Shown here in pieces: positions 233-64,000 of a DNA stretch of 64,000 bases (the first letter of the stretch is position 1; each line of letters starts with the position of its first letter). A model generated the notes under the pieces. That model had not been told where the DNA came from. It ran no database searches and worked only from the letters and a program-made list of their open reading frames with translations. Position numbers and translations under genes: made by a program. The DNA comes from Mobula hypostoma (Eukaryota): assembly GCF_963921235.1 (NCBI RefSeq), contig NC_086108.1:42842001-42906000 (forward strand), written 5' to 3'.

Positions 233-493
233 TCCCTTGTGAGCCACAGAATGTCACAGTACAACTGGATTGTAACCTCAATACAGCTCTGGTTCTGTGG
301 GACGACAGTAAAGGAGCGCTGTGGTACACTGCTGTTGCGGAAGGAGCTGATGGGAACATCGTGTCGTGCAGAACGTCAGAAGCATCATGTAGAACACCCC
401 TGTTACTGTGCGGCCAGATATATTCTGTGTATGTTGTAGCATCTGACAACAATTGTAACCATTCTCTGAGCTCAGTGGTTGAAATTCAAGCAG
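233..493 (+). CDS. Exon A1 (FN3 domain, 261 nt)
   Basis: ttttcAG|TCCCTTGTGAG...GCAG|GTaact; VPCEPQNVTVQLDCNLNTALVLWDDSKG... Confidence 0.92.
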
Positions 494-3400
494 GTAACTA
501 ATTAATGATATGGGATGTACCAGTATGAAACAAGCTTACAGCATGTTTGGTTAGCTTGTCATGCATTTCTGTGCAATCATTTATACTCTTTCATTCAATT
601 TGTAATCTCAATCCCATGCTAGGCATTTTTAATGCTTTATAAGAATTTTTAGAATTTATTGTGGGAGTTTTTTCAATATTATTTTATATTTACCCATTTC
701 TGGAATTTATACAAATTGACTGCCCTTTACTTATTTATTTCTTTGATTCCCCCAGCTCCCTGTAGTCCCCAGAATGTAAGTGCTCACTTGGACTGTACAA
801 CGCACGGAGCGTCAGTTTGGTGGGAGGAGAGCGAGGGGGCAGTGTACTATGCTGCCATGGCAGAAGGAACGGAAGGAGACAAGTACTCGTGCAATACAAC
901 AGAAGCAAACTGTGAGATCGCAGGCCTCCCATGTGGCCAGACGTACAATATATCTGTGTTAGCGATGGACGAGAATTGCACCAGTTTACCAAGTCCAGCT
1001 TTTAATATTGAGACAGGTAAACTTATAATTACCTTTTTATTTAACATAACAAAAGCTACCTTATTTCACTCGTTAAGAAAATGCAGGAATAAATTGAAAT
1101 GTCATCATTAGGGCTCTACATCAAATATATTCACAATAACTATAGTTAGTTATTATTGTAAGCTTCATCATCAATTGTATCAGTTGCTGATCCTTGCTCT
1201 GAAAAACTGATTACGCAGTTATTTTCCTTTCATTCCCAACAATCAATTTGAGAACCTTTTAATGTAAAGATAAAGTGCAATTTCATAATTCTGTTTGTTT
1301 GTAAGATATGGACATATTTATGCAGGAATACATTGACAGTACTTTATTAATTTGATTATAAAACTATGATTATTTTTTCTGCAGTACCATGTATCCCACA
1401 GAATGTGGTAGCTCACATCAACTGCGAGAATAACACTGTCTCAGTGTTTTGGGATCCCAGCAATGGCTCAGAGTCATACCATGTAACAGCACAAGGGACC
1501 AATGGCCACTGGGCCTCCTGCAATACAACAGGCACTGAATGTGAGGTCTCTGATGTGTACTGTGGACTGTATTACTACATAACTGTACAGGCAGTCCGTA
1601 TGCAGTGTAACAGCTCACACAGCTCTGCTGTGGCAGTTAAAACAGGTAATTCTAGTCAAAACTGTATATTAAAATTCTGCAGATATTCTCTTTTGCATCT
1701 AACTGTTATGTGGCTGAATACTTGTGCAACAGTTTCAGGTTAAGTTCTTCTTCTTGCAGTACCGTGTGTCCCCCAGAACGTCAATGCTTACATGGACTGT
1801 GATGCTGGATTTCTGTCAGTCTCCTGGGAGTTCAGTGAAGGTGCATCATCATACATTGCCACTGCAGAAGGAGGTGACGTGCAGCGATGCAGCGCCAACG
1901 ATACGCTGTGTGACATCACTGACCTGTCCTGTGGAGAGACCTATACTGTCACAGTCCTTGCGCACGATGACACCTGTGACTCTGCTGAAAGTCCTTCCAT
2001 CACAATGAGAACAGGTAACTGCTGGGTCGTCCAATTTCTGAATCGCTGATTTCTCCATCAGTCACACTAACTGATTTCTGATCTGGCAAAAACTCTATTT
2101 TCCTGAAAAAGCTCTCCTGTATCTTTTCAAGCAATTACAAAAACCAGTCCCTCAAGTCAGCTGCTGCTGTACATCCGCCACTCATTTGATCTCCTTGTTC
2201 TCTTCTAGTTTGCTGCATCCCACAGAACCTCGATGTCCATGTAGACTGTGACACAAACGATGCTTCAGTACTGTGGAGCCACACTAAAGGTGCAGTCTCT
2301 TACTCGGCAACAGCAGAAGGAAGTGATGGGCACCCAGTTTCCTGTGAGACGGCCAGTACCGAATGTCAGATAACCAACCTATACTGTGGACAGGTGTATA
2401 ATTTAACTGTGACAGCACTGGACGGTGTGTGTGACACCTCACAAAGCTATCATTTTGAATTTAGCACTGGTATGTCTTTCTACTTCTATATTCCTCATAA
2501 TTCTAAACTGTGCAGCCTGTTTGCCACAACAAATTAATTCACTGTGCACCGTACATTCCACAATGTAAAAATATTCCAATGCACTTAATTGGGACTTTAT
2601 TAGCAAATCTATGATTTGTTGTGTCAAATTATTCTAAGTGACACTTAGATACCTAACTTTAAGTTAGATGACATTAACAATCTAACATTTCTGCTATGTC
2701 CTGATAAATCTTTCTTTTCATTGAAAACATAGAAATATTGACAGGTTTTGTGCAGGAAAAGGCCCTTCAGCTAGGAGGTCTATTCCAACCACCATGCCAC
2801 ATTAAATTAACCTTAGCTGTCTGCACATGGGTCATCCGTCTTAACCAATTTCCCCCTGGGATCAATAAAGTATGACTATGACTATGACTATGTTCCCTGC
2901 CTGTGAACATGCTGTTTAAATGTGTCAAAAGACTTAAGTCCAAAAATATTGTATCGATTTTTCTCTTACTTTTGCTTTTCTATATTAATGGTGTTTAAAA
3001 GGGCATGTTTTTCTTTTTGTAAATATATGGTGACTGTTATTTGAGGACTCTGTATTCAAAATTGTTTGTCAAGATTGGCAATATAACCTGGACCACCTCC
3101 AGAAAAAAAGCAGTTGCAGTATCTTACCCAGTCACAATGTGTTTCTGTAATTTGCAGCCCCTTGTACACCCGAACACACTTCCACCAGTCTGGACTGTGA
3201 CACCAGGAGTACGTCAGTGACCTGGGCGAAGGCTGAGGGTGCCATGTGGTACATTACAACAGCAGAAGGACAAGATGGACACGTTTCACTGTGTAACACA
3301 ACAGAGACGAGCTGTGACTTTGTGGACCTGCACTGCAGTCAGACATATTCAATAACTATAACGGCAGTGGACAGTGACTGTCAGAGTGTAAATACCTCTA

Positions 3401-6400
3401 TTTTTGAAACTGAAACAGGTAAAAATCTGAAGGAGTTTATGAGGCATGAGAAATGTTAATCCAGTGCAAGATAGTTCATTTTCTGAGGATTGTGATCCAG
3501 GAGAGCCACATTGGTAATTTTGGTGTTTATGTTATGTTTGCTTTTAGTTCTAATTTAAAAAAAATAAAGTGGATGCACTATTCTCTAGGTTTCCATGCAA
3601 CTTTTAACACCTTATAAAGGTAGTTATAAATTTCTATTTGTAGAGTGAAGATTTTTCCCTCTTGCTGTGGGACTATTTCCCTTGGGTTTTAAAAATAAAA
3701 TTGTAAATTGTAGTCTGAAGATACTGTGTCTTTGAACAGGAAGTTGGTTACTGCATGACTTCCCAGGATATTTTCTACATTTCGCTTTTTTCCTCTGACT
3801 TTGATATTGAAAGAAACATTCAAAGTGCACTTCTATCATTTATTAGTGACCCATTTGTTTTGTTTTCTCCTCCTGTCCTGAAGCCCCTTGTCCCCCTCAG
3901 AACGTACACGCTGATGGTGTTGGTGTCACCGCCTTTGTATCATGGGAGCCGAGTAACCTCACAGTGTGGTATACCGCTACGGCACAGGGGAGCGATGGAC
4001 ACACAGCCACCTGTACCACATCCAAAACAAACTGTCTCATCCCAGATCTTCACTGCAGCCAAACATACAACATCTCTGTCCTCGCATTTGGTGAAACCTG
4101 TAGCAGCTTCCGGAGCTCCCACTACGAAATTCATACAGGTAAATTAGAAAAAAGCCAGTCAGTGATGTAGTGGCATCAGCATCGAACTTGGAGGCCAATG
4201 GTAGCGGTTCGAATCTAGCCAGCCCCTTACACGCTTTCCATCTGTGCTGGGATGAGTGTTGAGGCAGCAACATGACCCCGTAAAAAACAGACAAATGCTA
4301 AGGAAATGGCAAAAAAAATGCCTCCCAATGCGCCACAACAGCCGAAGAAGAACAGCAAGAACAAATTAGAAAAAGAGGATCTGTTTCTATTACATCTTTC
4401 ATCTAAGCGCATTTCATAATTGTATGTCTATTATTTATTAAAAAATTCACTGGCAAGACCAACATTTATCAGTTCCTCCCAGTTTCATTTGGGTAGGTGC
4501 TCTTGAATTCCCTTTTTAAACCATTTTCTTTTCTCTGCTGAAAGCACTCCCACAGTAATATTCAGCAGGGCTTCCAAGATATTAACTCGGCAACGGAAAA
4601 AAAATGTATTTTCATGGTCAGGATGTTGTGCGAATTGAAGAGGAACCGGGAGTTGTTGATACACATTGCAGCCTCAGAGTGAACTTGTGATAGACAAAGT
4701 GAATGTTTATGATGAAGGATGGGATGCCATTCCAATAGATTGCATTGTACGAGATGGCATCAGCCTTGTGAGCTGTTGTTGTTGCCAGGCAGTACAGAGA
4801 GAGCCTTCAGTTCACCACTCATTGTAGATGGTGGTTGCTAGATGTAAAGTGAAAGTGATGTTTGCTATAGTCGGTGAGTCTAGGGCATGATCTCAGAATA
4901 GAAGGATGTCCATTTAGAACAGAGATAGGGAGGAATTTCTTTTGCCAGAGGGTAGGGAACCTGTGGAATTCATTGCCATAAATGGCTTGGTCATTGAGCA
5001 TAATTAAAGCAGAGGTTGATAGGTTGCTGATTAGTCAGGGCATCAAAGGTTACAGGGAGAAGGCAGGAGAATGACATTGAAAGGGATAATAAATCAGCAA
5101 TGTTGGAATGGCAAAGCAAATCATGGGCCAAATGCTGCAATTCTGCTCCTATATCTTATGGTCTATGTGAAGTTTCCAGCTTCCAACTTACTCTTATCGC
5201 CACAACATTCATATGGCTGGTCCTGTTGAGTTTCTGGCCAGTGGTGACTACAGCATTTTGGTGGTTTTCCTTCAGTGAGGGTAATGCCATTGATCATCAA
5301 GGAGAGATGATTAGATTACATCTTTTTAGAGAATATCTCAGCATTACACTTGCGTTTTGCAAATGCTGCTTTCTGTTTATCAGCCTATGACTAGAAATTA
5401 TCCAGGCTTACTGCATGCAGTTGTACACGATTCACTTTTCTGAGAGGTAGAGATGGGATTGAACATGGTGCATTTCCTAGCAAGTATCCCCATTTCTAAC
5501 CCTATGATGGAAGGATGGTCATTGGTGAGGCATCTGAAGATAGTTAAACCTAGAACATTGTCCTGAGGGCCTGAAAAAGGTGTAATGACTTCCAGCAGCC
5601 ACAAACTCCCTTTTCTCAAATATAACTCCGGTCATGAGAGAGCTTCACCTTGATTCCAATTGAATTTAGTTTTAACGGGAATGTTTAAGACCACTTTCAG
5701 AAGCATTTTGCATCATTAAAAAGGCTGGTTTTGAAGTGTAGTAACTGTAGGTAATAAGCCAATGAGTTGCTCACATCAGAGTCCCAAACAACAACACAAT
5801 TTGTGCAACACTTTTAGCATTTACAATTACTGGCTGAGGAGACAGTAATTATTTGCAGTGGACTGGTCCTGCTTTTGTGCACCTGCAAATCAAAGGAATT
5901 TTATGCTTGGATGCAAGAATTTCATTGTTGTCTCTCTCCTAGGCCATATTGGCTATTCGTGCGCTAAGTTCTGAAGCATGTTTTCCACCCTAGAGCTGTG
6001 ATGTTGTCATCCCTTTCCCAGTGCTCGCGGCCTTTATGCAGTGGGAATTCAATTTTGCTGAAGAAGGAAGCTGAGATGGATGGCATCTCTTTTTAATAAT
6101 GGCTGGAAGTTGCTAAACTTTATCTTTCCAGATATACTAGGCTTTGTCAATATGGAGAAAAAGAGGCTCTGTCAATATGGAGAAAAAGAATATTCTTGGT
6201 TTCGGCTCCTCTCCATTTTTTAAAATTGTCCACTACCATTCAGGACTGGATGTGATTGTTCCACAGCTTTGAGCAGGTCATTTGATTGTAAGATCACTTC
6301 AGTCTGCTGCACCATTTATCAGAGACACATGGCTCCAAGTCCACCTTAACTCCTTTCTGATGATTGGCACAACCTACCTGTAATCTTGCACTACTCCGCA

Positions 6401-9400
6401 GTCCACCAGTCATCTTTTTCACCACTGCCCTCTCCTCCTCTTTATACTGGCCATGTCACCTCTCCACTCTCAGTTCTGATGCATCAACAATTCCCTTCTT
6501 CTGGCAGATGCTGCTCACCCCACTGAGTTCCCCAGCAGATTCTCCAGAATCCAGCATCTGTAGACTCTTGTGTCTTCGTGGTCCTGTGTGGTGCTTTCAC
6601 CAGGAAGATAGATTAACATAGGTGCCCCTTGTGGTTTTCATGGCATGTTCTATTCATTGAACCAGGGTTCGTCCTCAGGGAAGTCTATGAGATTACAGAT
6701 CTGGGTTGATACCCATTTCTTAGCTCCTAGAACTGATGTGAATCATTCCTATTTAATACTGTTAAAGAAACGCGGAATATGACAGAGAGCATTATCAATT
6801 GGATATTGGACATTGTCTCCACAAGGACATTGCAGACAAATTTCAGACAGATACAACTGCAAAAGAGAGATTGAGTATGAGATTAACTAGTTTATCACTT
6901 CATGTTAATTGCCTTGACACCTGCCGCAGCCCCATTTGGTTTTGAGTCAGGGCTGTTGTAGATGACTATGTTATGGGCCCTCCCACCCTAAGTGCTTCTT
7001 CCAAACTTCTCAACATAAAAGAGTATGCTGATCCATGAACTAGGAGAGGAAAGTGAGTGGTAATTAGCAAGACACAACCCAACATCATGAGACCTCATGG
7101 ACATTGTGTACCTACTTTGATGGATACACCAGAGTTCTGCTGTATCCAATACATCCAACTGTAGAGTCGGATGTATCCATTAATAGTAAAGGAGAGCTCT
7201 GAAGCAAAGTGCATAAAGTAAAATTTTACTTCACTTAAAACCCAAGATGTTTGTGAGGAGAACTTTCCAGGGTGCTTTGAGCTGGATATACCTTTGTCAT
7301 ATTCAAACCCGGTGCTTCAGTTTATCCAATATTATTCATATGATGTTTTAGCATACCAACTTGACCTAAGAAAATTGCTTGCTGCATGTTTGAAGCCATA
7401 TATAGACCAGACTGCACAAAGACAACTGATTTTCCTACTGGAGAGAGTTAGTGAACCAGACAGATTGTTATCGTATTCTAGATGTTTCATATGACTATTC
7501 TTAATGATAGTTTTTTTTAAATTAATTCCAGATATTTTAATTGATTACTTTTAGTTGCTGAATGCCACAGTAAGACTCAAATTCATGTCTCTTATCATTA
7601 GTATGGAACTTCAGACCTCTCATCTTGTAACAGAACCATGTGTTATATTCACTGTTCATATAGAAAGCACTGAGAGATTAAATATCTGTGGATATGGACC
7701 ATAACCTATCAATGACTCGAGCTAGAACTTGTTCAAATGATTACACAATAACATATGAGTTGGCAACATGTGGAATATAAAGGGGACAGATTCACCAGGA
7801 CTATTTAAGTTCATATAAAACATTAGGAAGGGCTACTTCTTAAGATTTTTCTCACATGAATTTTTTAATTGCAGTATTTCTGTTTCTATAGCACCTTGTG
7901 CTCCAGATGAAATCGTCGCCAATGTGGACTGTAACTCCAACAGAGTGGTAGTTTCATGGGGCCGGACTAATGGAGCAAAAGAGTTCGATGTGACCGCCGA
8001 GGGAAGTGATGGTCATACACACTCACACAACACAACAGAGACACGCCACGAAATGCTGGATTTACACTGTGGACAGTCCTATAACATAACCGTAACAACA
8101 CTGAGTTACAGCCGGCATGGCATTTCGAGTACTTCCATCCAAATACAAACTGGTAAATACAGCTAATCTTTAAATAGCATATAGCAAGGAAATAATTTTA
8201 TATTATTGTGCATATTTTGGGCCAGTAGGAAAAATTATATTCCAAGTAACACTGTTCATTGCTGAGAATCTAACAACTGAGTTAGGTTCTGATTCAAATG
8301 CAGTATCCTCCTGGTCACATGACTGCCAGAGCAATGCTATACACTATGATTTTTCCAGGCATTTAAAGAGTCATGGCTTTAATACAAGTGATACAAGGGC
8401 TCAAATCTAAACCTGCATATACAGTCTCTGTTGTAACAAAAGGTAATATCTTCAGGAGATTCCAGAGTGCATGTATATACAGACATCACTCACTTCTGTA
8501 AAGATGTTTAGAACAGACTGACAGATGAAGTCTTGTATTTCACAATGAGAGGTTAAATGTTTAAGTGTGAACAGCAAACATTTTATGTTATTATTTTATT
8601 ATGCCCATGTTGAAGGTGTCTTTGAAAGTTAATTTGTTGAACTCATAGTTGTGATTCCACAGATGTAATTCCTCTCTATTTTTTCCTGCCTTTGTCCTAA
8701 TGTGTGAACTGTAGGAAAGCATTTTCAAACCCCCTTCATTTAAAATATTCCCGCTGGTACAGACAATGCAGTGTTCTGTGTTGCAAAATAATAACATTTT
8801 CAAAAAGTTGCTTGGTTATCAATTAAACACCCTATTCCCAAAGTTTTGAGGATACCTTTATGGATTCGTGAGAAAAAAGGAAGACCGTTTTAATGAAAAT
8901 GCATTTTAAAAAGCTGTCCCATCCAATGTACTAATGCTTGTATAGGTTGTTTAATTGCTTAAAGTCGGCATGACTCTATGGTTGTATAAAAACAGAAGCA
9001 TAAGAGGTGTGCGAGATGCTGGATGATGGAGTCACCTTGACAGAAAACAGCCTGCATCATTTTATACTTGCCCTGTTGTACCTGTTGAATCTGTAATCGT
9101 TTCGCTCTGCTTTTGTGTTATCTGGCATGAGGAAGCCAGCTCCATTGGGAATTTGTTCATCAATCCCTTTTGACCAGAGACATAAATATTGATTTCAACA
9201 TAATGTCTGCGATGATGAGTTTGAGAAATAAGGAATGAGAATAATTAAAATTATTCAGTCATTGCTAAAATAAGTAAGTAAATATCTATTCACATATTTA
9301 GTGAAGCATCTAATGAATGATGCATTAGAGCCCATAGATCTTAAAGTAAATATTTGGTAAATTCACAACGATAGTTGATCCTTTTGTCTTACATTCTTTT

Positions 9401-57400: not shown

Positions 57401-60400
57401 TGGTCTTACTGACATTGAGTGCAATGTTGTTGTTGTAACACCACTCAACCAGCTGATCTATCTCACTCCTGTATGCCTCCTTATCACCACCTGAAGTTCT
57501 GTCAACAATAGCTGTGTCATCAGCAAACTTCATAGATGGTGTTAGAGCTCTGCCTAGCCACACATATTATCTAATTAGATATTTATATTAGCTGTACCTA
57601 ATAAAGTGGCCACTGAGTCTATTTTCAACTTTCCTCACTATCAGCTTCATGGCCAATTTTTATATCAGCTGAAATCTTCCGAATTGTGGTGCCTACTTTT
57701 AAGTCTATCATTAATAATGAACACCAAAAGCGAAGGACTTTGTCCTGAGTCTTACAGAGCAAACGTAGCAGCTTTCCAGTCTTATAGTCCAGTTCAGTAC
57801 CCTGTGTTCCCTGCCACTTACAGTATTTTACTCTCCTCCATCTCCTCTAACTTTTTAAAATGTTTAATTTGGAATCATGCTCCCATATAGACACGTAGAA
57901 GCATGATATCAGTTCAATTACCAAACCACAACCCTTTTCTTTAAATTGTGTTTCAGTAATTGAAGTGATATCATGCTTCCCATGTCTATCTGTGTCTATG
58001 CCTATCTCCTATTTCACTTAATAGTTTTCTCGCTTTGAAGTTACGGCAATAGCATTGGCAAAGCTTACTTCTAAGTTCTTTGTTTGCAAAATCACACTTA
58101 CTAACCCCTTGCCTCCCATATCAGGTTTGGCTGATCTCTTTTCTAAATCTACACTCAAGTTCCCATTCTTTAATTAAATCTAATTTAAATCCAGTGCAAT
58201 GCTCCATTGAACAATGGAGCCAAGATTTCTCAGCTTTTGTCATCGTCTCTGCAATAAAGTCCTGCATTCTATTTGCCGTCCTAATATTTGTAGTATTGCA
58301 TTATAACTTAGTGTGGTGATCACCCTGTGCTGCAACATTCTATGGGCAATGTCCATTTAAACAATATTCTGTATTTTTATCCAGCAAATCAGATAACTTA
58401 CATTATATATATATTATATTATCCTCCAAAATATGCCCAGACACTCACTGTGTGTCCTTTAGCAGACTCTTTGTGAACTTCTCCTAACATGCCTTCTTGT
58501 GCTGTCAGCAAGTTTGACTACAATACACTCTCCATCTTCATCTGAAATATTAACACGTTGCAAGTATTTGAGGTGCTGCTAGTACAAAATTGCCAACTTT
58601 AAAATGACTTGCACAATGCTTTCCTCTAATACAACACTCAAGAAATAACAGACATTTTTTTTCAACCTTCCAGTGCCATGTAATCCACCATACCTTGAAG
58701 CTAATGTGGACTGTGCAAACAACTCCATGTTGCTTTCATGGGGCGACAGCAATACAGCAATATCATATAGGGCAGATGTCAGTGCTAACAATGAAGACCT
58801 GCTTTACTGTAACACAACAAACACAAGCTGTTACATTCAGCAGCTGAGCTGTGGTACCAAGTACAACGTGTCTATTTATGCTTCTGATGGAGTTTGTAGG
58901 AATATAATTGAAACTACATATGAAGTCGGCACAGGTAAATGTACTACTAATACTATCCATTATTCTACATCAGTGCTTTCATTTAAAACCTTATTTGTTA
59001 TGAAAAAAGATTATATTAATATGTACTATACATATTACTTTTTACAAAAATCCTGTCTATTTATAGGCATACAAATAGCAACTGCCTGACCAGTTTTATT
59101 CTAGTTTAATACGACTGGTGTTCATTTCATCTTACTTGTTATTCCATCCATGTTGACATTTAGTTCCATGTGTACCAGAAGACATCGAAGCCATATTGGG
59201 TCCTGCCAGTAATGGAGTACAAGAAATTGAGGTCAACTGGATGGACAGTCACTGTGCTGAAGACTATGAAGTAGATATTAATGGACAAATTGAACAGGAT
59301 CCGTTCTCCCTGTTTATACTGCGCTCATATTGGACAACCAGAACATTCTTCCAGTTCCCGATTCCTTGCAGTTCCACATATAACATTTCTGTTACAGCTC
59401 GGAATTCAGCAGGAGTTAGCAGCCCAAGCACTCCTTTAACTGGTATCAGTGGTAAGTGATAGAATTAAAAACATAGAAACATAAAAATATAGAAAATAGG
59501 TGCAGGAGTAGGCCATTCGGCCCTTCAAGCCTGCACCGCCATTCAGTATGATCATGGCTGATCATCCAACTCAGAACCCTGTACCTGCATTCTCTCCATA
59601 CCCCCGATCCCTTTAGCCACAAGGGCCATATCTAACTCCCTCTTAAGTATAGCCAATGAACTGGCCTCAACTGTTTCCTGTGGCAGAGAATTCCACAGAT
59701 TCACCACTCTCTGTGTGAAAACAGAGCACATTTTCACATACGAGGGGTGATTGATAAGTTCATGGCCTAAGATAGAAGGAGCCAATTTTAGAAAACCTAG
59801 CACATTTATTTTTCAATGTAGTCCCCTCCTACATGTACACACTTAGTCCAGCGGTCGTGGAGCATACGGATCCCTTCTTTGTTGAAGTGGTCCATGGCAG
59901 GTGTGATTGATAAGTTCACGGCCTAAGGTAGAAGGAGATGAGTTATTAATTTCAAACTTTCTGCATAATCACTCAGAGTTGAACTGCACGTGCATGTAAC
60001 GAGAGCGTCTTGGACCTCCAGGTGGTCCACAGCAGGGGTGATTGATAAGTTCGTGGCCTTGGGTAGAAGGAGATAAGTTATACAGCTCTTGTTACATGCG
60101 CGTGCAGTTCTACTCTGTGTGAAAATGCAGAAAATTTGAAGTTAATAACTCATCTCCTTCTACCTTAGGCCACAAACTTATCAATCACCCCTGCTGTGGA
60201 CCACTTCTGGAGGTCCAAGACACTGACTTCTACAAAGAAGGGATCCGTATGTCCCACGACCACTGGACTAAGTGTGTAAATGTAGGAAAAATAAATGTGC
60301 TAGGTTTCCTAATATTGACTCCTTCTACCCTAGGCCACGAACTTATCAATCACCCCTCGTATTTGAAATCGCATCATACTGTTAAACGATTCCTACAGCT

Positions 60401-63307
60401 CTGTACTGTTGGGACTTAGAAGATATTAATGTACAAGAAAATAAATACAAATCATGTGTTCCGGTACGTTTTTTTATATACACAACTACTTCCTTCTTAA
60501 TCCAACCTTAGCCTTCTACTTCGATGACTACATCATCCTCTTCAATGTTTTGCCTCCTAACTGAGTTGGATGGTACTGACCTTACTCAGTGTCACTGTTT
60601 TATTGAAATAAAGCCAGGGAATAATCTCCATTTGTTTCTCTTGAATTGCCCGATCATCTTTCTTGGCATGCTTCTCGATCTCATTTACAGATACTCCTAA
60701 ACAATATTATCCAAAAATATCAGGCTCCCTATATACCCTGATGACACCTAAGTTCCATCTCACCAGTGCCTCTCCCTTGGTTGGCCTTAAAATTGTAGTG
60801 TGGACTTTCAGCCCAATTGAATTGATATTACCCAACTTCCTTCACATGTTGTGGAATAAGTGAAGAAAGATAAGCTAGCCAGATCTGAGACTGGCAGCCA
60901 GTGGGCAAATCAGACCCTGTACAGGGGCGTCTGTTCATCAGAGAATATGAACCCAGTTGGGGAGAGGGGCAAGGAGAGATGTGAACTGGTCTTTGATAGA
61001 TCATTGCCTTGTGACAAGTCTTGGGTAGAGATCAGTGGCCTATATTAAGGTTCATTAATAGAAAGAATCAATTTTTTGGGCTAGGGAGAATCAGAGGGCA
61101 ATTATGAGTGAGAGGTGAGAAAGTATTTGGTAATGTGGCGGTAGCGTGCAGGAATGGCCTAACAAAGAAGAGGAGGTAAATTAATAGGCCCCAACTAAAT
61201 AGAATCTCAATGTGGCATGGCCATTAAAGCTTGCTTTTTTCCAGGAATAAAGGGGAGAAGCTCTCTTCTACAATCACTCTGAGCACCGGTGCCCCACAAG
61301 GCTGTGTACTCAGTCCCCTGCTGTATTCACTGTACACTCATGGTTGTGTAGCCAAGTTTCCATCAAACTCAATATATAAGTTTGCTGATGACACAACAAT
61401 TGTAGGCCGTATCTCAGGTAATGATGAGTTTGAGTACAGAGAGGAAATTAAGAACCTGGTGGCATGGTGCGAAGACAATAACCTATCCCTGAACGTTAGC
61501 AAGACGAAGGAATTGGTTGTTGACTTCAGAAGGAGTAGCAGACCGCACGACCCAATTTACATCGGTGGTGCGCAAGTGGAACAGGTCACAAACTTTAAGT
61601 TCCTCGGGGTCAATATCACAAATGACCTGACTTGGTCCAACCAAGCAGAGTTCACTGCCTAGAAGGTCCACCAGCACCTTTACTTCCTGAGAAAACTAAA
61701 GAAATTTGGCCTGTCCCCTAAAACCCTCACTAATTTTTATAGATGCACCGTAGAAAGCATTCTTCTAGAGTGCATCACAACCTGGTATGGAAGTTGTCCT
61801 GTCCAAGACTGAAAGAAGCTGCAGAAGATCGTGAACACGGCACAGCACATCACACAAACCAATCTTCCGTCCGTGGACTCACTTTACACTGTACGCTGTC
61901 GGAGCAGTGCTGCCAGGATAATCAAGGACACGACCCACCCAGCCAACAGACTTTTTGTCCCTCTTCCCTCCAGGAGAAGGTTTAGGAGCTTGAAGACTCG
62001 TACGGCCAGATTTGGGAACAGCTTCTTTTCAACTGTGATGAGACTGCTGAACGGATCCTGACCCGGATCTGGGCCGCACCCTCCAAATATCCAGACCTGC
62101 CTCTCGGTTTTTTTGCACCACCTTACTTCCCATTTTTCTATTTTCTATTTATGATTTATAATTTACATTTTTAATATTTACTAATTTTAACTATTTTTAA
62201 TATTTAATATTTGTAATCCAGGGAGTGTGAAGCGCAGATTCAAATATCGCTGTGATGATTGTACGTTCTAGTACTGATTGTTTGGTGACAATAAAGTATA
62301 AAGTAAAGTATAACCAGTAATAGACCTCAACTAAATAATGTGGTCGAGCTTCTCCTGTTATGCTCTAAAAGGATCTTTGCGCAGGGAATGTCATTGCTTT
62401 GCACATGACCTGATTCACTCCTGCCATAGAGTATTAATAACTTGTTCTTCAACTTCATCATCTAACCTGTAATCTTTAACATTGATAAGGACAAGGGCAG
62501 CAAGCACTTGGGAAATCAAGATGAAGATCAGAGATGAAATTTTTGACGGTGGAGAACGTTCAAGAGCCAAATGACATTCCATCCAAGTCACGTATCATCT
62601 TGACCTTCAATTATTACTGTATAATGACTAAAATATGTAGGAAATTAGATAATATCAACTCAATTGTGCCTGAAAACTACACCAGAATTTTAAGGCCAGT
62701 AAAGAGATAAGAGAGGTGCTGGTGAGATGAATCTAGATGATCAGGGTACACATGGGACCTAGTAGGCTTGATGCTTACTGAACCTGCTACAGAGATCAAA
62801 GTCATCTCTGATACTTCAAGACCATTTCTGCCACCCCAACCCACCTCTGATCCAAAAATACATGTCTCTGCTTTGAATATACTCTAATGACTAACTCTCA
62901 GGATTTACTGCACTTTGCGTTAAGAAATTTAAATAACAATCAATTTACTCAATGCAAAATTCTAGTCTCTTCACTCAAAAGAAAAGCAATCTCTTGCTGG
63001 CATTTTAAATTCAGCATTATGCAAGTAACAAACCAATCATGAATAAATAATATTTTGTATTTCAGTTCCTTGCTCTCCAACCAATCTAAATTCTTCTTGG
63101 GAAAATGGTACACTATTTCTATCGTGGAAGGAGTCGATTAATGCCGCAGAGTATGTTGTGTATGAAGTTTCCAATTTAGAAAGAAATGAGATTTGCAGAA
63201 CATCAACTCTCTCGTGTAAAGTTTCAAATGTTCAGAATGATACAGTTGAAATTGTTGCTTTAAATTCTGCTGGCGAAAGTGAAATCACTCCAGTAATTTT
63301 TTTCTAA
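233..63307 (+). CDS. Multi-exon gene, 5'-incomplete: giant Cys-rich FN3-repeat protein, FNDC7-like; 41 exons, about 3,550 aa in the window
   Basis: 41 AG..GT-bounded exons, each encoding a PC-x-P...C...W...Y...C-x6-C...L-x-C-G/S-x-x-Y...C FN3-type module. All are phase 1-1 and splice in frame to TAA at 63305-63307. The motif resembles vertebrate FNDC7 and fish FNDC7-like proteins; orthology not established. Confidence 0.9.
756..1016 (+). CDS. Exon B1 (261 nt)
   Basis: cccAG|CTCCCTGT...ACAG|GTaaac; APCSPQNVSAHLDCTTHGASVWW... Confidence 0.92.
1385..1645 (+). CDS. Exon C1 (261 nt)
   Basis: tgcAG|TACCATGT...ACAG|GTaatt; VPCIPQNVVAHINCENNTVSVFW... Confidence 0.92.
1760..2014 (+). CDS. Exon D1 (255 nt)
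   Basis: tgcAG|TACCGTGT...ACAG|GTaact; VPCVPQNVNAYMDCDAGFLSVSW... Confidence 0.92.
2209..2469 (+). CDS. Exon E1 (261 nt; not in ORF track)
   Basis: tctAG|TTTGCTGCATC...ACTG|GTatgt; VCCIPQNLDVHVDCDTNDASVLW... Confidence 0.9.
2845..2892 (+). mobile_element. LINE 3' tail fragment (Rex1-like) with (ATGACT)n
   Basis: GGGATCAATAAAGTATGACTATGACTATGACTATG: a polyA signal plus a short tandem tail. Confidence 0.45.
3158..3418 (+). CDS. Exon F1 (261 nt)
   Basis: tgcAG|CCCCTTGT...ACAG|GTaaaa; APCTPEHTSTSLDCDTRSTSVTW... Confidence 0.92.
3884..4138 (+). CDS. Exon G1 (255 nt)
   Basis: tgaAG|CCCCTTGT...ACAG|GTaaat; APCPPQNVHADGVGVTAFVSW... Confidence 0.9.
4160..4345 (+). mobile_element. tRNA-derived SINE fragment
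   Basis: A-box-like TGATGTAGTGG and B-box GGTTCGAATC; related to the copy at 40612-40860. Confidence 0.6.
4875..5168 (+). mobile_element. CR1-type LINE 3' fragment
   Basis: CR1 ORF2 C-terminal-like sequence (CAGAGGGTAGGGAACCTGTGGAATTCATTGCC) and a TCTTATGGTCTATG tail; related to 41770-42548. Confidence 0.65.
7892..8152 (+). CDS. Exon H1 (261 nt)
   Basis: tatAG|CACCTTGT...ACTG|GTaaat; APCAPDEIVANVDCNSNRVVVSW... Confidence 0.92.
8250..8482 (+). pseudogene. Decayed pseudo-exon I1
   Basis: Lies 97 nt after H1, where I2/I3 sit after H2/H3. Aligns to I (CTGAGAATCTAAC, CAAGTGATACAAGGGCTCAAATC), but acceptor AG>AA, donor GT>AC, several deletions and lost cysteines. Confidence 0.85.
9423..9683 (+). 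CDS. Exon A2 (261 nt)
   Basis: ttcAG|TCCCTTGT...ACAG|GTagtt; paralogue of A1. Confidence 0.92.
10525..10785 (+). CDS. Exon B2 (261 nt)
   Basis: ttcAG|CTCCTTGC...ACAG|GTaaaa; APCRPQNVSTYLNCATHTASVWW... Confidence 0.92.
10974..11234 (+). CDS. Exon C2 (261 nt)
   Basis: tatAG|CACCTTGT...ACAG|GTaatt. Confidence 0.92.
11350..11604 (+). CDS. Exon D2 (255 nt)
   Basis: tgcAG|TACCGTGT...ACAG|GTaact. Confidence 0.92.
11807..12067 (+). CDS. Exon E2 (261 nt)
   Basis: tgtAG|TTTCCTGC...ACTG|GTaggt. Confidence 0.92.
12250..12580 (+). mobile_element. CR1-type LINE 3' fragment
   Basis: TTCACTCAGAGGGTCGTGAGAGTGTGG (FTQRVVRVW) motif and a CTATGACT tail. Confidence 0.65.
13939..14199 (+). CDS. Exon F2 (261 nt)
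   Basis: tgcAG|CCCCATGT...ACAG|GTaaag. Confidence 0.92.
15705..16380 (+). mobile_element. Tigger/pogo DNA transposon, internally deleted (Tigger4/Zombi-like)
   Basis: TA|CAGGTTGAGTACCCCT...AGGGGTACTCAACCTG|TA TIRs with TA TSD. The internal ORF 15977-16192 (SAGWLQKFEKRHGI) is a CENP-B-type HTH remnant. Confidence 0.88.
17105..17359 (+). CDS. Exon G2 (255 nt)
   Basis: tgaAG|CCCCTTGT...ACAG|GTagta. Confidence 0.9.
17903..18205 (-). mobile_element. Rex1/Babar-like LINE 3' fragment, containing a (TA)n microsatellite near 18010-18030
   Basis: GATTCAGAATCAGGTTTAATATC tail, homologous to the 3' end of the element at 56658-57563. Confidence 0.6.
18682..18942 (+). CDS. Exon H2 (261 nt)
   Basis: cacAG|CACCATGT...ACTG|GTaagt. 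Confidence 0.92.
19040..19300 (+). CDS. Exon I2 (261 nt)
   Basis: aatAG|CACCCTGC...TCAG|GTaaaa; APCIPENLTAELNCDLNTISFWW... Confidence 0.92.
21413..21673 (+). CDS. Exon A3 (261 nt)
   Basis: ttcAG|TCCCTTGT...ACAG|GTaact. Confidence 0.92.
21800..22110 (+). mobile_element. Decayed SINE/LINE-tail repeat
   Basis: Resembles, from memory, the common elasmobranch SINE body (CATCTGGTT...TCTGGCCTA...CAATAAA); strongly decayed. Confidence 0.35.
22616..22876 (+). CDS. Exon B3 (261 nt)
   Basis: tccAG|CCCCCTGC...ACAG|GTaaat. Confidence 0.92.
23260..24232. mobile_element. Tc1/mariner-pogo superfamily non-autonomous element
   Basis: TIRs (GATTCTGGTTAATTGG ... CCAATTAACCAGAATCCACTG) flanked by TA. Confidence 0.7.
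23499..23637 (+). mobile_element. Penelope-like pseudo-LTR fragment with 13-bp TSD
   Basis: TSD AATGGAGGAATTA at 23486-23498 and 23638-23650; the insert is partly palindromic (CATCTATGGAAAAAA...TTTTTTCCATAGATG). Confidence 0.7.
24308..26545 (-). mobile_element. CR1 LINE, 5'-truncated ORF2 (reverse transcriptase), young
   Basis: ORFs 24969-26492 and 24387-24956 carry [34 protein letters not shown] and KFADD; (TTTCTATG)n 3' tail. Confidence 0.95.
26735..26995 (+). CDS. Exon C3 (261 nt)
   Basis: tacAG|TACCTTGT...GCAG|GTaaca. Confidence 0.92.
27102..27356 (+). CDS. Exon D3 (255 nt)
   Basis: tgcAG|TACCGTGT...ACAG|GTaact. Confidence 0.92.
27700..28500 (-). mobile_element. Decayed CR1 LINE fragment
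   Basis: Reverse-strand CR1 ORF2 C-terminal-like sequence (e.g. CAACATTCTGGTGAACCTCTTTTGCAC). Confidence 0.5.
28527..29013 (+). mobile_element. Tc1-like non-autonomous DNA transposon
   Basis: GGCCACTTTATT ... AAAATGGCCACTGAGTG termini. The interior encodes a Tc1 N-terminal HTH remnant (GMIVGAAQSGLSISETDDLLGFSHT). Confidence 0.8.
29166..29426 (+). CDS. Exon E3 (261 nt)
   Basis: tctAG|TTTCATGC...ACCG|GTatgt. Confidence 0.92.
29637..30200 (-). mobile_element. Penelope-like element 3' remnant
   Basis: The minus strand reads RVEEQHLIICQGCHQPNNMNIN, like the C-terminus of PLE GIY-YIG ORFs. A pyrimidine-rich spacer and a pLTR with a CTGATGA...GAAA core follow. Confidence 0.7.
30416..30676 (+). 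CDS. Exon F3 (261 nt)
   Basis: tgcAG|CCCCATGT...ACAG|GTaaca. Confidence 0.92.
31560..31995 (-). mobile_element. Decayed CR1 3' fragment
   Basis: Minus-strand ORF with RGDLIEIYKIMK, the CR1 ORF2 C-terminal motif. Confidence 0.65.
33446..33700 (+). CDS. Exon G3 (255 nt)
   Basis: ccaAG|TCCCTTGC...ACAG|GTaaaa. Confidence 0.9.
34479..34610 (+). mobile_element. Penelope-like pLTR fragment
   Basis: GTCCTGAAGAAAGGTCTTGGCCCAAAAC...GATGCTGCCTGACCTGCTGAGTTCC...CAGCATCTGCAGA; same family as 29637-29780. Confidence 0.6.
34751..35011 (+). CDS. Exon H3 (261 nt)
   Basis: cacAG|CACCATGT...ACTG|GTaaat. Confidence 0.92.
35110..35370 (+). CDS. Exon I3 (261 nt)
   Basis: aatAG|CACCCTGC...TCAG|GTattg. Confidence 0.92.
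36975..39200 (+). mobile_element. Old decayed CR1-group LINE, interrupted by a minisatellite and other inserts
   Basis: AGVPQNSVLSP ([10 protein letters not shown]-like) near 37035; later RT C-terminal-like segments and a 3' UTR-like CAAGGCAATTAGGGATGAGAAATAAA. Confidence 0.5.
37223..37906. repeat. Minisatellite: 57-bp unit, 12 copies
   Basis: Unit GGCACTGACCATCTACAACAAGAGGACCTCATTACCTCCCTTTGATGTTCAATACCA. Confidence 0.97.
39860..40120 (+). CDS. Exon A4 (261 nt)
   Basis: ttcAG|TCCCTTGT...ACAG|GTaatc. Confidence 0.92.
40612..40860 (+). mobile_element. tRNA-derived SINE
   Basis: A box TGGCGCAGTGG and B box GAGTTCGAATCC; CpG-rich, so probably young. Confidence 0.7.
41119..41379 (+). CDS. Exon B4 (261 nt)
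   Basis: ttaAG|CTCCCTGT...ACAG|GTaacg. Confidence 0.9.
41770..42548 (+). mobile_element. CR1 LINE 3' portion, decayed
   Basis: QRDLGV, QRRFTRMILG and LIETYRIL motifs; TTATGATCATATGG tail. Confidence 0.75.
42817..43077 (+). CDS. Exon C4 (261 nt)
   Basis: tacAG|CACCTTGT...GCAG|GTaaca. Confidence 0.92.
43184..43438 (+). CDS. Exon D4 (255 nt)
   Basis: tgcAG|TACCGTGT...ACAG|GTaact. Confidence 0.92.
43548..43825 (+). mobile_element. V-SINE-like element
   Basis: tRNA-like head (CAGTGGTTAGC...GAGTTCAATTCC) and a GTGGGTTTCCTC...GGTTTCCTCCCACAGTCCAA core. Confidence 0.65.
43924..44184 (+). CDS. Exon E4 (261 nt)
   Basis: tctAG|TTTCGTGC...ACTG|GTaggt. Confidence 0.92.
45291..45551 (+). CDS. Exon F4 (261 nt)
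   Basis: tgcAG|CCCCTTGT...ACAG|GTaaaa. Confidence 0.92.
45995..46249 (+). CDS. Exon G4 (255 nt)
   Basis: tgaAG|CCCCTTGT...ACAG|GTaata. Confidence 0.9.
46379..47192. mobile_element. Tigger-like non-autonomous element spanning the assembly gap
   Basis: TA|CAGGTCCACAATCCCTTATACGAAATTC ... GAATTTCGAATAAAGGAATGTGCACCTG|TA. Confidence 0.75.
46517..46656. other. Assembly gap (140 N)
   Basis: Run of N. Confidence 1.
47673..47933 (+). CDS. Exon H4 (261 nt)
   Basis: tatAG|CACCTTGT...ACTG|GTaata. Confidence 0.92.
48042..48302 (+). CDS. Exon I4 (261 nt; diverged I copy)
   Basis: aatAG|CACCTTGC...ACAG|GTatcg; APCIPENLAAELTCSSNTVSITW... Confidence 0.9.
48440..48675 (-). mobile_element. V-SINE-like element
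   Basis: GTGGGAGGAAACCAGAGCACCCAGACGAAAC is the reverse complement of the V-domain core. Confidence 0.55.
49646..49906 (+). CDS. Exon J (single-copy FN3, 261 nt; not in ORF track)
   Basis: tgtAG|GACCTTGC...ACAG|GTaacc; GPCTPQNTVADIDCTIHSALASW...LHCGKLYNITIVAVNQMC. Confidence 0.9.
50400..50660 (-). mobile_element. Decayed V-SINE-like element
   Basis: GGGAGAAAGCCTGAGCA...CTCCACACAGACAGCACCAGAGGTCAGG. Confidence 0.5.
51586..51846 (+). CDS. Exon K (single-copy FN3, 261 nt)
   Basis: cgtAG|CACCATGT...ACAG|GTaatg; APCIPEGITAQVDCDTNDALVSW... Confidence 0.9.
52208..52468 (+). CDS. Exon L (single-copy FN3, 261 nt)
   Basis: tccAG|GACCATGC...GGAG|GTaacc; GPCISRNVSAVVDCDTNIARVSW... Confidence 0.9.
52754..52972. 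mobile_element. Palindromic Penelope-like insert with 14-bp TSD, inside an older CR1 3' fragment (about 52645-53200)
   Basis: TSD AGTTTTAAAGGGGA at 52740-52753 and 52973-52986; 79-bp inverted arms at 52787-52865 and 52891-52969 with one mismatch. Confidence 0.8.
52851..52884 (-). ncRNA. Minimal hammerhead ribozyme-like motif (Penelope-associated)
   Basis: The minus strand reads GUC-CUGACGA-AGG(GUCUUGG)CCU-GAAA-CG-UC-GAC: intact CUGANGA/GAAA/UH core, short helices I and II, and a palindromic ACGU helix III. Confidence 0.6.
53655..56480 (+). mobile_element. CR1 LINE ORF2 (APE endonuclease plus RT), frameshifted
   Basis: [42 protein letters not shown] and KFADD motifs; (TTTCTATG)n tail. Confidence 0.93.
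56658..57563 (-). mobile_element. Rex1/Babar LINE 3' portion
   Basis: KFADDTAIV...WCYNNNIALNVSKTKELIVDFRK. Confidence 0.85.
58674..58934 (+). CDS. Exon M (single-copy FN3, 261 nt)
   Basis: tccAG|TGCCATGT...ACAG|GTaaat; VPCNPPYLEANVDCANNSMLLSW... Confidence 0.9.
59164..59451 (+). CDS. Exon N (atypical FN3, 288 nt)
   Basis: tttAG|TTCCATGT...AGTG|GTaagt; VPCVPEDIEA...RSYWTTRTFFQFPIPCSSTYNISVTARNSAGVS. Confidence 0.88.
59468..59719 (-). mobile_element. CR1 3' fragment of the same young family as 24308-26545
   Basis: Near-identical to 24308-24555. Confidence 0.9.
59741..60359. mobile_element. Mariner-like MITE (foldback)
   Basis: TA|CGAGGGGTGATTGATAAGTT ... AACTTATCAATCACCCCTCG|TA, with internal TIR copies. 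Confidence 0.85.
61250..62312 (+). mobile_element. Rex1/Babar LINE 3' portion
   Basis: TGAPQGCVLSPLLYSLYT...KFADDTTIVG...LNVSKTKELVVDFRR; AATAAAGTATAAAGTAAAG tail. Confidence 0.9.
63066..63307 (+). CDS. Exon O: last coding FN3 exon, ends in TAA (not in ORF track)
   Basis: ttcAG|TTCCTTGC...; VPCSPTNLNSSWENGTLFLSWKES...ALNSAGESEITPVIFF*, followed by G|GTAAGT. Confidence 0.85.
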
Positions 63308-63562
63308 GGTAAGTCTTTCTGCCTTGAAAATACATGATAAGTCATTGAAGGTTTATTCTAAACAGATATACCAAAAGGGTTTTTTGATTTTTTTTGTACT
63401 ACAGATTTTTTTTTGTGTATTAGTAACTTAATATAATTGAGAGAAATAGTAGACAAATTTCCTTATTAAAATGTGCTTCTATAGATTTGATTTGTTCAGC
63501 TTGTGGTCAGATGCCCAAATCTATTATTAAAGCATGTTTTGCTTATTTTTATTCCAGTAATT

Positions 63563-64000
63563 TACGAGCCTGACTGAATTTTTTGAGGATGTGACTAAAC
63601 ACATTGATGAAGGTAGAGCAGTAGATGTAGTGTATATCGATTTCATCAAGGCATTTGACAAGGTACTCCATGCAAGGTTCATTGAGAAAGTAAGGAGGCA
63701 TGGGATCCAGGGGAACATTGCTTTGTGGATCCAGAACTGGCTTGCCCACAAAAGGCAAAGAGTAGTTATAGATGGGTCATATTCTGCATGGAGGTCAGTC
63801 ACCCGTGGTGTGCCTCAGGGATCTGTTCTGGGACCTCTACTCTTCGTGATTTTTATAAATGACCTGGAGGAAGAAGTGGAGGAATGGAAATTAAATTTGC
63901 TGACGACACAAAGGTTGGAGGTGTTGTGGATAGTGTGGAGGGCTGTCAGAAGTTACAATGGGACATTGATAGGATGCAAACCTGGGCTGAGAAGTGGCAG
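63563..64000 (+). mobile_element. CR1 RT fragment (runs off the window end)
   Basis: Highly similar to 55250-55680 ([24 protein letters not shown]). Confidence 0.88.

What the first reader, a model, noticed from the sequence alone, without database searches (positions are those of the whole stretch)
233..63307. Giant FNDC7-like protein with a 9-domain super-repeat, over 40 FN3 domains in this window alone
Seen: 41 one-domain exons give about 3,550 aa, arranged (A-H)(A-I)3 J K L M N O, and the array continues upstream. Known: mammalian FNDC7 is far shorter and poorly characterised. Inference: a secreted, disulfide-rich, rod-like glycoprotein with a titin-style super-repeat that sets a molecular period. 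No transmembrane segment is visible. It may be a mucus, skin, egg or extracellular-matrix structural polymer, or an innate-defence protein, with lineage-specific expansion.
Basis: partly seen in the sequence, partly recalled or inferred. Interest (0 to 1): 0.75.

Follow-up and report, generated by a model that had tools for sequence, protein, structure and literature searches.

The report
Giant secreted FNDC7-family protein gene
The window holds most of one very large ray gene that strings together at least 41 small fibronectin-type domains into a long, acidic, sugar-coated secreted rod; the gene is real and neatly periodic, but gene-prediction pipelines already model the same gene in skates, sharks, bony fishes and amphibians, and nobody has studied what it does.

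Summary
Observation confirmed. There are 41 + strand exons, each encoding one FN3 domain. All have AG/GT borders and are phase 1-1. They splice into one open 3,552-aa frame in the order (A-H)(A-I)x3 J K L M N O. The ninth exon of unit 1 is a decayed remnant. The N gap lies inside intron G4-H4 and touches no exon.

The domains are FN3. Their cysteine-rich subtype matches mammalian FNDC7 best (TM 0.91-0.92). The gene is not the FNDC7 orthologue. It belongs to a giant paralogue group (zebrafish fndc7rs1, many "uncharacterized LOC" models) defined by a conserved C-terminal N-O domain pair.

The thorny-skate RefSeq model (5,055 aa) has a signal peptide and the same A-I units and J-O tail. It aligns to the window protein at 77% identity without a gap and ends at the same codon. 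So this is a new member of a kind already predicted but unstudied.

The nine domain types are each monophyletic across sharks and rays. Other vertebrate lineages show periods of 3, 4, 5 or 7, or none. Copies are under purifying selection (pN/pS 0.31) and are homogenised in exons only.

Function is inferred: a secreted structural glycoprotein. The "molecular ruler" idea is untested. The scan had noted the dead exon and the exon-limited homogenisation on this same window.

The parts
233..493 (+). exon A1 (one FN3 domain)
   Evidence: AG/GT, 261 nt, phase 1-1
756..1016 (+). exon B1
1385..1645 (+). exon C1
1760..2014 (+). exon D1 (255 nt)
2209..2469 (+). exon E1
3158..3418 (+). exon F1
3884..4138 (+). 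exon G1 (255 nt; lacks the second cysteine)
7892..8152 (+). exon H1
8257..8471 (+). dead exon I1: decayed remnant, not part of the reading frame
   Evidence: 71-76% to I2/I3, indels, acceptor AG changed to AA
9423..9683 (+). exon A2
10525..10785 (+). exon B2
10974..11234 (+). exon C2
11350..11604 (+). exon D2
11807..12067 (+). exon E2
13939..14199 (+). exon F2
17105..17359 (+). exon G2
18682..18942 (+). exon H2
19040..19300 (+). exon I2
21413..21673 (+). exon A3
22616..22876 (+). exon B3
26735..26995 (+). exon C3
27102..27356 (+). exon D3
29166..29426 (+). exon E3
30416..30676 (+). exon F3
33446..33700 (+). exon G3
34751..35011 (+). exon H3
35110..35370 (+). exon I3
39860..40120 (+). exon A4
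41119..41379 (+). exon B4
42817..43077 (+). exon C4
43184..43438 (+). exon D4
43924..44184 (+). exon E4 (domain modelled: pLDDT 90.6, seven strands)
45291..45551 (+). exon F4
45995..46249 (+). exon G4
46517..46656 (.). assembly gap (N), inside intron G4->H4; touches no exon; not filled
47673..47933 (+). exon H4
48042..48302 (+). exon I4 (old 'terminal I' subtype, 79% nt to I2/I3)
49646..49906 (+). exon J (unique tail; found in ray and skate models, absent from shark models)
51586..51846 (+). exon K
52208..52468 (+). exon L
58674..58934 (+). exon M (last cysteine-rich domain)
59164..59451 (+). exon N (288 nt; first half of the conserved C-terminal pair)
63066..63308 (+). exon O; stop TAA at 63305-63307, followed by G and a consensus donor GTAAGT

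Best explanation
The window carries the 3' 63 kb of a single giant gene of the FNDC7 family. The gene is the orthologue of thorny-skate LOC116977489 and belongs to the paralogue group that zebrafish annotators call fndc7rs1.

Gene structure (shown). Forty-one symmetrical phase 1-1 exons each encode one 84-95-aa FN3 domain. They join head to tail with no linker into at least 3,552 aa, about 380 kDa before glycosylation.

Protein properties.
- Shown: most domains carry six conserved cysteines; types H and I have three and four.
- Shown: the chain is very acidic (pI 4.3, K+R 3.1%) and has 93 N-glycosylation sequons.
- Shown: it has no hydrophobic anchor, no RGD and no furin motif.
- Inferred from the skate orthologue: upstream of the window lie a signal peptide, three plain FN3 domains and about six unique cysteine-rich domains.
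- Inferred: the product is a secreted, disulfide-stabilised, glycosylated bead-on-a-string rod.

C-terminus (shown). The chain ends directly after domain O, at the same codon as in skates. Sharks and bony fishes read on from there into a furin-type R-R-K-R site.

Origin of the super-repeat. It arose by tandem duplication of a nine-exon block before sharks and rays split. Three observations are shown: each type A-I is a separate clade across species, purifying selection acts on the copies, and sequence homogenisation stops at exon borders. That this homogenisation is gene conversion is inferred.

Function (inferred, not shown). The most likely role is a structural component of an extracellular gel or coat made by an epithelium. 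Mucus layers or sensory-organ gels are candidates, because smaller family members mark the supporting cells of lateral line and cochlea.
For: Exon anatomy and open frame.

FN3 identity: all 15 domain types hit Pfam fn3. The domain profile hits fibronectin in the PDB at 9e-15. The single-domain model has pLDDT 90.6 and seven strands.

FNDC7 subtype: the best reviewed-UniProt structure matches are mouse and human FNDC7 (TM 0.91/0.92, rmsd 1.1-1.2 A), against about 0.8 for other FN3 domains. Mammalian FNDC7 aligns at 26-28% identity, E about 1e-50.

One gene rather than several: the skate model P0294 (5,055 aa, with signal peptide) aligns to all 3,552 aa at 77% identity with zero gaps and ends at the same residue. 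Catshark has a 4,001-aa model with the same unit order. A Hypanus 1,141-aa model is followed 12 bp later by the next same-strand model, which looks like an annotation split.

Coding constraint: pooled pN/pS is 0.31 over 51 paralogue pairs.

Conserved N-O pair: it lies at the C-terminus of giant and small relatives. Its model has pLDDT 94 and pTM 0.86. Among solved structures, its highest TM-scores (about 0.6) are to tandem FN3 domains of fibronectin and titin.

Super-repeat history.

Exon-limited homogenisation.

Composition, absence of TM, RGD and furin motifs.

RNA: runs labelled RNA hold 5-14% of the sampled words of 47600-52500, where exons make up 27%.

Against: - The run kinds are guessed ('RNA?').
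- The 5' end lies outside the window, so the signal peptide and total length are borrowed from the skate model.
- Several chondrichthyan annotations give only 700-1,960-aa models. These could reflect real shorter transcripts rather than split models.
- Symmetrical exons allow any skipping, and the skate has 18 clustered isoform sequences, so the full-length product may not be the main one.
- The function rests on composition, architecture and the expression of smaller paralogues. No paper on the giant form was found.
- Disulfide pairings could not be read because model coordinates are not returned.
Confidence: 0.8

Rival explanations
1. The array is several tandem FNDC7-like genes of about 8-20 domains each, as annotated in Hypanus, Narcine, Heptranchias and Heterodontus, and not one giant gene.
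For: Chondrichthyan models of 700-1,960 aa named 'FNDC7-like' exist. Narcine has a 906-aa model covering only F-O.
Against: - Within the window, every exon is an internal-type phase 1-1 exon.
- The spliced frame has no stop before exon O, and the spliced 3,552 aa contain no signal-peptide-like hydrophobic stretch.
- Some short models begin in the middle of a domain, for example Narcine P0042.
- The Hypanus model is followed 12 bp later by the next one on the same strand.
- Skate and catshark RefSeq models join all units in one protein, collinear with the window without a gap.
Confidence: 0.07
2. One gene, but the symmetrical exons are used as optional cassettes. The locus would then mainly make a population of shorter isoforms of variable length rather than one 41+-domain chain.
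For: - All exons are phase 1-1, so any subset keeps the frame.
- The skate cluster holds 18 member sequences, and the listed isoform lacks the A domain of its third unit.
- Narcine has five isoforms, and one Narcine model joins I directly to B.
Against: - Every exon copy keeps intact splice sites and is under purifying selection. This is expected only if each copy is regularly included.
- The one exon that lost its acceptor decayed.
- No mutually exclusive signal was looked for or seen.
Confidence: 0.1
3. The array is an unexpressed or decaying relic: a pseudogenised tandem expansion that merely looks coding.
For: One exon (I1) is dead. Introns are full of LINE fragments.
Against: - The 41 exons carry no internal stop or frameshift and all have canonical splice sites.
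- pN/pS is 0.31.
- Cross-species conservation of each type is 70-90%.
- RNA-labelled runs hold part of the exonic words.
Confidence: 0.03

Closest known systems
Thorny skate LOC116977489 (Amblyraja radiata, RefSeq 'uncharacterized protein', isoform X5, 5,055 aa) and catshark LOC119964794 (4,001 aa)
   Same: Same domain types in the same order: units A-I, then L M N O, with J and K also present in the skate. The skate model is 77% identical over all 3,552 aa without a gap and has the same C-terminal end. The period is nine domains.
   Different: The skate model has five units against the four seen here, although the window may not show them all. Sharks lack J and K and read past domain O into an RRKR site and a short tail. 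These are automatic predictions with no published study.
Giant fndc7rs1 / fndc7b / 'uncharacterized LOC' proteins of teleosts, gar, bichir, sturgeon, lungfish and amphibians (about 2,300-6,700 aa)
   Same: They share a long run of six-cysteine FN3 domains and a conserved N-O pair at the C-terminus (35-51% identity). The models with complete N-termini that were inspected start with a signal peptide. No TM-like hydrophobic stretch was seen in the C-terminal tails inspected. They are S/T-rich and carry many N-glycosylation sequons.
   Different: The internal domains have no one-to-one counterparts of types A-M. The periods differ (3, 4, 5 or 7) or are absent. Many have a furin-type site and one more FN3 after domain O. 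Cyprinid and mormyrid versions are near neutral pI rather than acidic.
Mammalian FNDC7 (733 aa; human Q5VTL7, mouse A2AED3)
   Same: It contains the same cysteine-rich FN3 subtype and gives the best structural match to the modelled domain. It also has a signal peptide followed by plain FN3 domains and then cysteine-rich ones.
   Different: It has only eight domains, is 26-28% identical, and shows no recognisable N-O tail by sequence. It is a separate paralogue, not the orthologue.
Titin A-band FN3/Ig super-repeats
   Same: A long chain of about 90-aa beta-sandwich domains, one per exon, with a higher-order period of several domain types kept in fixed order. Titin FN3 tandem A77-A78 is among the better solved matches to the tandem model (TM 0.59).
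   Different: Titin is intracellular and without disulfides, and its period is tied to the known thick-filament spacing. Here the protein is extracellular, no periodic partner is known, and the period is not conserved outside elasmobranchs.
Gel-forming and membrane mucins (the names 'mucin-5AC-like', 'mucin-3B' and 'mucin-4-like' are given to some relatives)
   Same: Very large, secreted, S/T-rich, heavily glycosylated.
   Different: In the profile and Pfam scans, all 41 exon products of the window matched only FN3-type domains. S/T residues sit inside folded domains. The mucin names are by-products of composition.

Membership tests
Fibronectin type III domain (Pfam PF00041) | Sequence match to the fn3 profile | tested here: met
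   All 15 domain types match fn3 at E<=1 (best 6.8e-7), although each single domain is below the gathering score. A profile of the 15 types hits fibronectin FN3 in the PDB at 8.7e-15 and titin at 1.4e-11.
Fibronectin type III domain (Pfam PF00041) | Seven-strand beta-sandwich fold | tested here: met
   The model of domain E4 has pLDDT 90.6 and seven strands. It has 112 PDB matches at E<=0.001, and the 50 listed are FN3 or FN3-like domains.
FNDC7 family (cysteine-rich FN3 subtype) | Closest reviewed relative by structure and sequence is FNDC7 | tested here: met
   Mouse and human FNDC7 rank first (TM 0.91/0.92, rmsd 1.1-1.2 A, 28-33% identity); the next FN3 domains have TM about 0.8. Mammalian FNDC7 aligns over about 700 aa at 26-28%, E about 1e-50 to 1e-56, and six of its eight domains match the window's cysteine-domain profile at about 1e-6 to 1e-20, the two N-terminal domains more weakly.
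FNDC7 proper (orthologue of the mammalian gene) | Same domain number and terminal architecture as the 733-aa protein | tested here: not met
   There are 41+ domains against 8. The conserved N-O tail gives only weak, non-specific hits in mammalian FNDC7 (best E 6e-8, scattered over several domains).
Giant fndc7rs1-like group | C-terminal pair of cysteine-poor FN3 domains (N-O) after a long cysteine-rich array | tested here: met
   The N-O pair is 35-51% identical to the C-terminal 170 aa of gar, sturgeon, lungfish, newt, caecilian and teleost giants, and 70-76% identical to shark and ray models, always at the C-terminal end.
Giant fndc7rs1-like group | N-terminal signal peptide and plain FN3 domains | not testable with these tools
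   The 5' end lies upstream of the window. These features are present in the skate, gar and teleost models.
Titin-style super-repeat protein | Fixed-order higher period of distinct domain types | tested here: met
   Lag-9 identity is 0.65 against 0.38 background. The nine types are each monophyletic (support 99-100) across five elasmobranch species.
Titin-style super-repeat protein | The period matches a periodic binding partner (ruler function) | not testable with these tools
   No partner is known. Relatives outside elasmobranchs have other periods or none, which argues against a family-wide ruler.
Mucins | Unstructured Pro/Thr/Ser repeat region, VWD or SEA domains | tested here: not met
   All 41 exon products of the window match the FN3 profile, and the Pfam scan of the 15 domain types found only FN3-type or other beta-sandwich families.

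The most novel reading that the evidence does not exclude
The nine domain types have been kept distinct and in the same order since before sharks and rays split. The reason would be that the rod assembles in register, with itself or with a periodic partner, to build an extracellular gel specific to aquatic vertebrates, such as the cupula of the lateral line or the ampullary or otoconial gel. On this reading the super-repeat acts as an extracellular molecular ruler. The loss of the giant form in amniotes would then track the loss of those organs.
Probability: 0.1. Interest if true: 0.8.

Novelty: new member of a known kind. Interest (0 to 1): 0.42.

Why it matters
The finding itself is a correct gene reconstruction with orthologues already in RefSeq, so it is not a discovery of a new kind.

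It does draw attention to a family that seems to have escaped study. These are secreted FN3 chains of 3,000-6,700 aa found in cartilaginous fishes, ray-finned fishes, lungfish and amphibians. No amniote giant appeared among the listed hits, which were capped at 105-150 rows per search.

The locus is also a clean natural example of three things:
- Independent block amplification with different periods (3, 4, 5, 7 and 9 domains) in different lineages.
- Domain-type identity preserved since before sharks and rays split, while copies are homogenised within each species.
- Homogenisation that stops at exon borders: exons are 96-99% alike on either side of an intron that can no longer be aligned.

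It also shows that several chondrichthyan annotations probably split this gene into 'FNDC7-like' fragments.

Tried and rejected
- Two hand-written regular expressions for the domain found 0 and then 28 copies. I replaced them with a profile search.
- Read-level evidence could not be obtained.
- The look-up of encoding contigs returned gene positions for the Hypanus model but no DNA, because the file was too large. The window could therefore not be placed against that assembly.
- I looked for further hidden or dead exons by DNA similarity. Only the I1 remnant was found.
- I looked for one-to-one counterparts of types A-M in gar, lungfish, newt and caecilian. There are none; only N and O correspond.
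- Literature searches on FNDC7, the fndc7 paralogue symbols, 'protein 7-like' and six LOC or accession names found nothing on the giant form.
- Disulfide pairing could not be read from the models because coordinates are not returned. The only hint is that the third and fourth cysteines are lost together in types H and I and in five homologue domains.
- Rejected readings: a transmembrane receptor (no hydrophobic segment), a mucin (no PTS or VWD), and an integrin ligand via RGD (no RGD).

Full report
**Observation**

A profile built from the window's own repeats finds 41 domain matches on the + strand and none on the - strand. Each match lies in an exon with a pyrimidine tract and AG upstream and GT downstream.
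- Exon lengths are 255 or 261 nt; exon N is 288 nt and exon O is 243 nt.
- All lengths are multiples of three, and every intron splits a codon after its first base, so every exon is phase 1-1.
- Joined in genomic order they give 10,662 nt and an open frame of 3,552 codons.
- The only stop is TAA at 63305-63307, the last full codon of exon O. One G and a consensus donor GTAAGT follow it.

Mean domain identity is 0.65 at lag 9 and 0.50 at lag 8, because unit 1 has eight exons. It is 0.37-0.39 at every other lag.

The ninth exon of unit 1 is present as a decayed remnant at about 8257-8471. It is 71-76% identical to I2/I3, carries indels, and its acceptor AG has become AA. No other hidden or dead exon was found.

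**The assembly gap**

The Ns at 46517-46656 lie inside the intron between G4 (ends 46249) and H4 (starts 47673). Both exons are complete with their own splice sites, so the reading frame does not depend on the gap. The G-to-H introns of the other three units hold no exon. The skate orthologue aligns across this point without a gap. The gap was neither filled nor looked up.

**What the domains are**

All 15 domain types match Pfam fn3, each below the gathering score on its own. A profile of the types hits fibronectin FN3 domains in the PDB at 8.7e-15 and titin at 1.4e-11.

A model of domain E4, made with 124 aligned domains, has pLDDT 90.6 and seven strands. Its listed solved matches are FN3 or FN3-like domains.

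Among reviewed UniProt structures, the two best matches are mouse and human FNDC7. They score TM 0.91 and 0.92 at rmsd 1.1-1.2 A, clearly ahead of other FN3 domains at about 0.8.

Most types carry six conserved cysteines, at domain positions 2, 13, 45, 52, 59 and 74. Types H and I lack the third and fourth together, as do five homologue domains, which suggests that those two pair. The other pairings could not be read.

**Is it coding and is it one gene?**

Over 51 paralogous exon pairs, pooled pN/pS is 0.31. That, with intact splice sites on all 41 exons, argues for regular use as coding sequence.

A search of 1.84 billion representative proteins with the domain profile found proteins with up to 58 such domains. 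They are named 'uncharacterized', fndc7rs1, fndc7b, 'FNDC7 protein, partial' or, misleadingly, mucin-like. They come from newt, lungfish, gar, caecilian, frogs and many teleosts.

The decisive relative is the thorny-skate RefSeq model P0294 (LOC116977489 isoform X5, 5,055 aa). Its architecture is:
- a signal peptide;
- three plain FN3 domains;
- six unique cysteine-rich domains;
- the units (A-H)(A-I)(B-I)(A-I)(A-I);
- the tail J K L M N O.

The window's 3,552 aa align to its residues 1504-5055 at 77% identity with zero gaps, and both end at the same position. A catshark model of 4,001 aa has at least five units followed by L M N O.

The many 700-1,960-aa 'FNDC7-like' models in Hypanus, Narcine, Heptranchias, Heterodontus and others map onto consecutive pieces of the same pattern. 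In Hypanus sabinus one such model is followed 12 bp later by the next model on the same strand. I read that as a split annotation.

I could not obtain read-level evidence. One run search showed runs labelled RNA holding 5-14% of the sampled words of 47600-52500, where exons make up 27%.

**The two ends**

The window starts in the intron before A1, so the 5' end is not visible. By analogy with the skate, either more units or about nine further domains and a signal-peptide exon lie upstream. The skate's first unit also lacks I, as does the window's unit 1, which hints that unit 1 may be the first. This is not shown.

At the 3' end, the N-O pair is the most conserved part of the family. It is 35-51% identical to bony-vertebrate giants and 70-76% identical to sharks and rays, always at the C-terminus.

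After domain O, sharks continue '...INFLQ ARRKR...', and many bony fishes continue through R-R-R-R-D into one more FN3. In this ray and in skates, the stop codon sits where sharks have that Q. The chain therefore ends about where furin would cut in the others.

The spliced protein has no transmembrane-like segment (highest 19-residue hydropathy 1.55), no RGD and no R-x-K/R-R motif.

A model of the N-O pair, using the skate sequence (80% and 66% identical to the window's N and O domains), has pLDDT 94 and pTM 0.86. It matches FNDC7 tandems best (TM 0.73-0.76). Among solved structures, its highest TM-scores (about 0.6) are to tandem FN3 domains of fibronectin and titin, against about 0.4 for cytokine-receptor modules.

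**Composition**

The protein has pI 4.28, D+E 11.5%, K+R 3.1%, Cys 6.3% and S+T 22%. It carries 93 N-x-S/T sequons and has a peptide mass of about 380 kDa for the part in the window. Shark, ray, lungfish, newt and caecilian relatives are similarly acidic. Cyprinid and mormyrid relatives are near neutral.

**History of the super-repeat**

In a tree of 80 domains from this window, Heterodontus, Heptranchias, Narcine and Hypanus, each type A-I forms its own clade with support 99-100. The nine-type unit therefore predates the shark-ray split.

Within a type, copies group by lineage. For type D, identity is 0.99 within Heterodontus and 0.96 within the window, but 0.80 between them. That fits either concerted evolution or repeated re-amplification.

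Some positional identity survives. The terminal I (I4) and the internal I (I2/I3) are distinct subtypes that both exist in the skate.

Between units, only the exons, their immediate flanks and a few short introns align. Intron C-D is the clearest case. It is 99% identical between units 1 and 2, and 93% between units 3 and 4. Between those two pairs it is about 50%, which means it is unalignable. The flanking exons are nevertheless 96-99% identical in every comparison. I read this as gene conversion confined to the exons by the divergence of the introns.

Outside elasmobranchs the internal domains have no one-to-one counterparts of A-M. The periods also differ:
- three domains in Pseudorasbora;
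- four in sterlet;
- five in Brienomyrus;
- seven in Misgurnus;
- none in gar, newt, bichir or caecilian.

The nine-domain period is therefore an elasmobranch feature and not a property of the family.

**Relation to what is known**

Mammalian FNDC7 (733 aa) shares the cysteine-rich FN3 subtype and the layout of plain domains first and cysteine-rich domains after. It has eight domains, is 26-28% identical, and has no recognisable N-O tail. It is a paralogue.

No paper on the giant form was found. [quoted passage not shown]

No amniote giant appeared in the hit lists. Those lists are capped, so this is only an indication.

**Organism**

Earlier notes of this scan call the genome the lesser devil ray. 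I did not verify that. It fits the closest database relative being the stingray Hypanus sabinus, with 92% identity over 1,135 aa and single domains up to 99%.

**Verdict**

It is an extracellular-type chain of FN3 domains, most of them with six cysteines, with many glycosylation sequons and a true nine-domain super-repeat.
- It is a new member of a group that annotation pipelines already predict in many anamniotes, including a near-collinear skate orthologue.
- The ruler idea and any tissue role are untested.
- The most interesting by-products are the lineage-specific periods, the long-kept domain-type order and the exon-limited homogenisation.
- The scan had already noted the dead exon (s1-143243) and the exon-restricted homogenisation (s1-141845) on this same window. 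My tests agree with both.

Noticed in passing
window 1645-1760, 11234-11350, 26995-27102, 43077-43184 (intron C->D in the four units): There are two unalignable intron versions. Units 1 and 2 are 99% alike and units 3 and 4 are 93% alike, but the two pairs are only about 50% alike. The exons on either side are 96-99% identical in all four units, so homogenisation stops at exon borders.
   Followed up: partly
window 63305-63314: The stop TAA is the last full codon before a perfect donor (AAG|GTAAGT). It sits where sharks have a glutamine codon followed by an RRKR furin-type site. Skates stop at the same place. Whether anything is still spliced from this donor, for example a 3' UTR exon, is unknown.
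   Followed up: partly
window 24387-26492 (-), 53343-56395 (+), 61231-62061 (+), 63527-64000: The introns hold reverse-transcriptase ORFs and fragments of LINE-type retroelements (Pfam RVT_1, E 1e-34, 1e-12 and 3e-15). The largest ORF is 507 aa on the - strand in intron B3-C3.
   Followed up: partly
window 37222-37902: A minisatellite with a 57-bp unit, 11.9 copies and 94% matches lies in the intron between I3 and A4. It produces long spurious ORFs on both strands.
   Followed up: no
window 3884-4138 (exon G1): G1 alone among the four G copies has lost the second conserved cysteine (Gly in its place). That leaves an odd number of cysteines in the domain.
   Followed up: no
Hypanus sabinus assembly GCA_030144855.1, gene model of P0163: The 1,141-aa 'FNDC7-like' model ends 12 bp before the next same-strand model. 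Several chondrichthyan annotations probably split this giant gene into pieces.
   Followed up: partly
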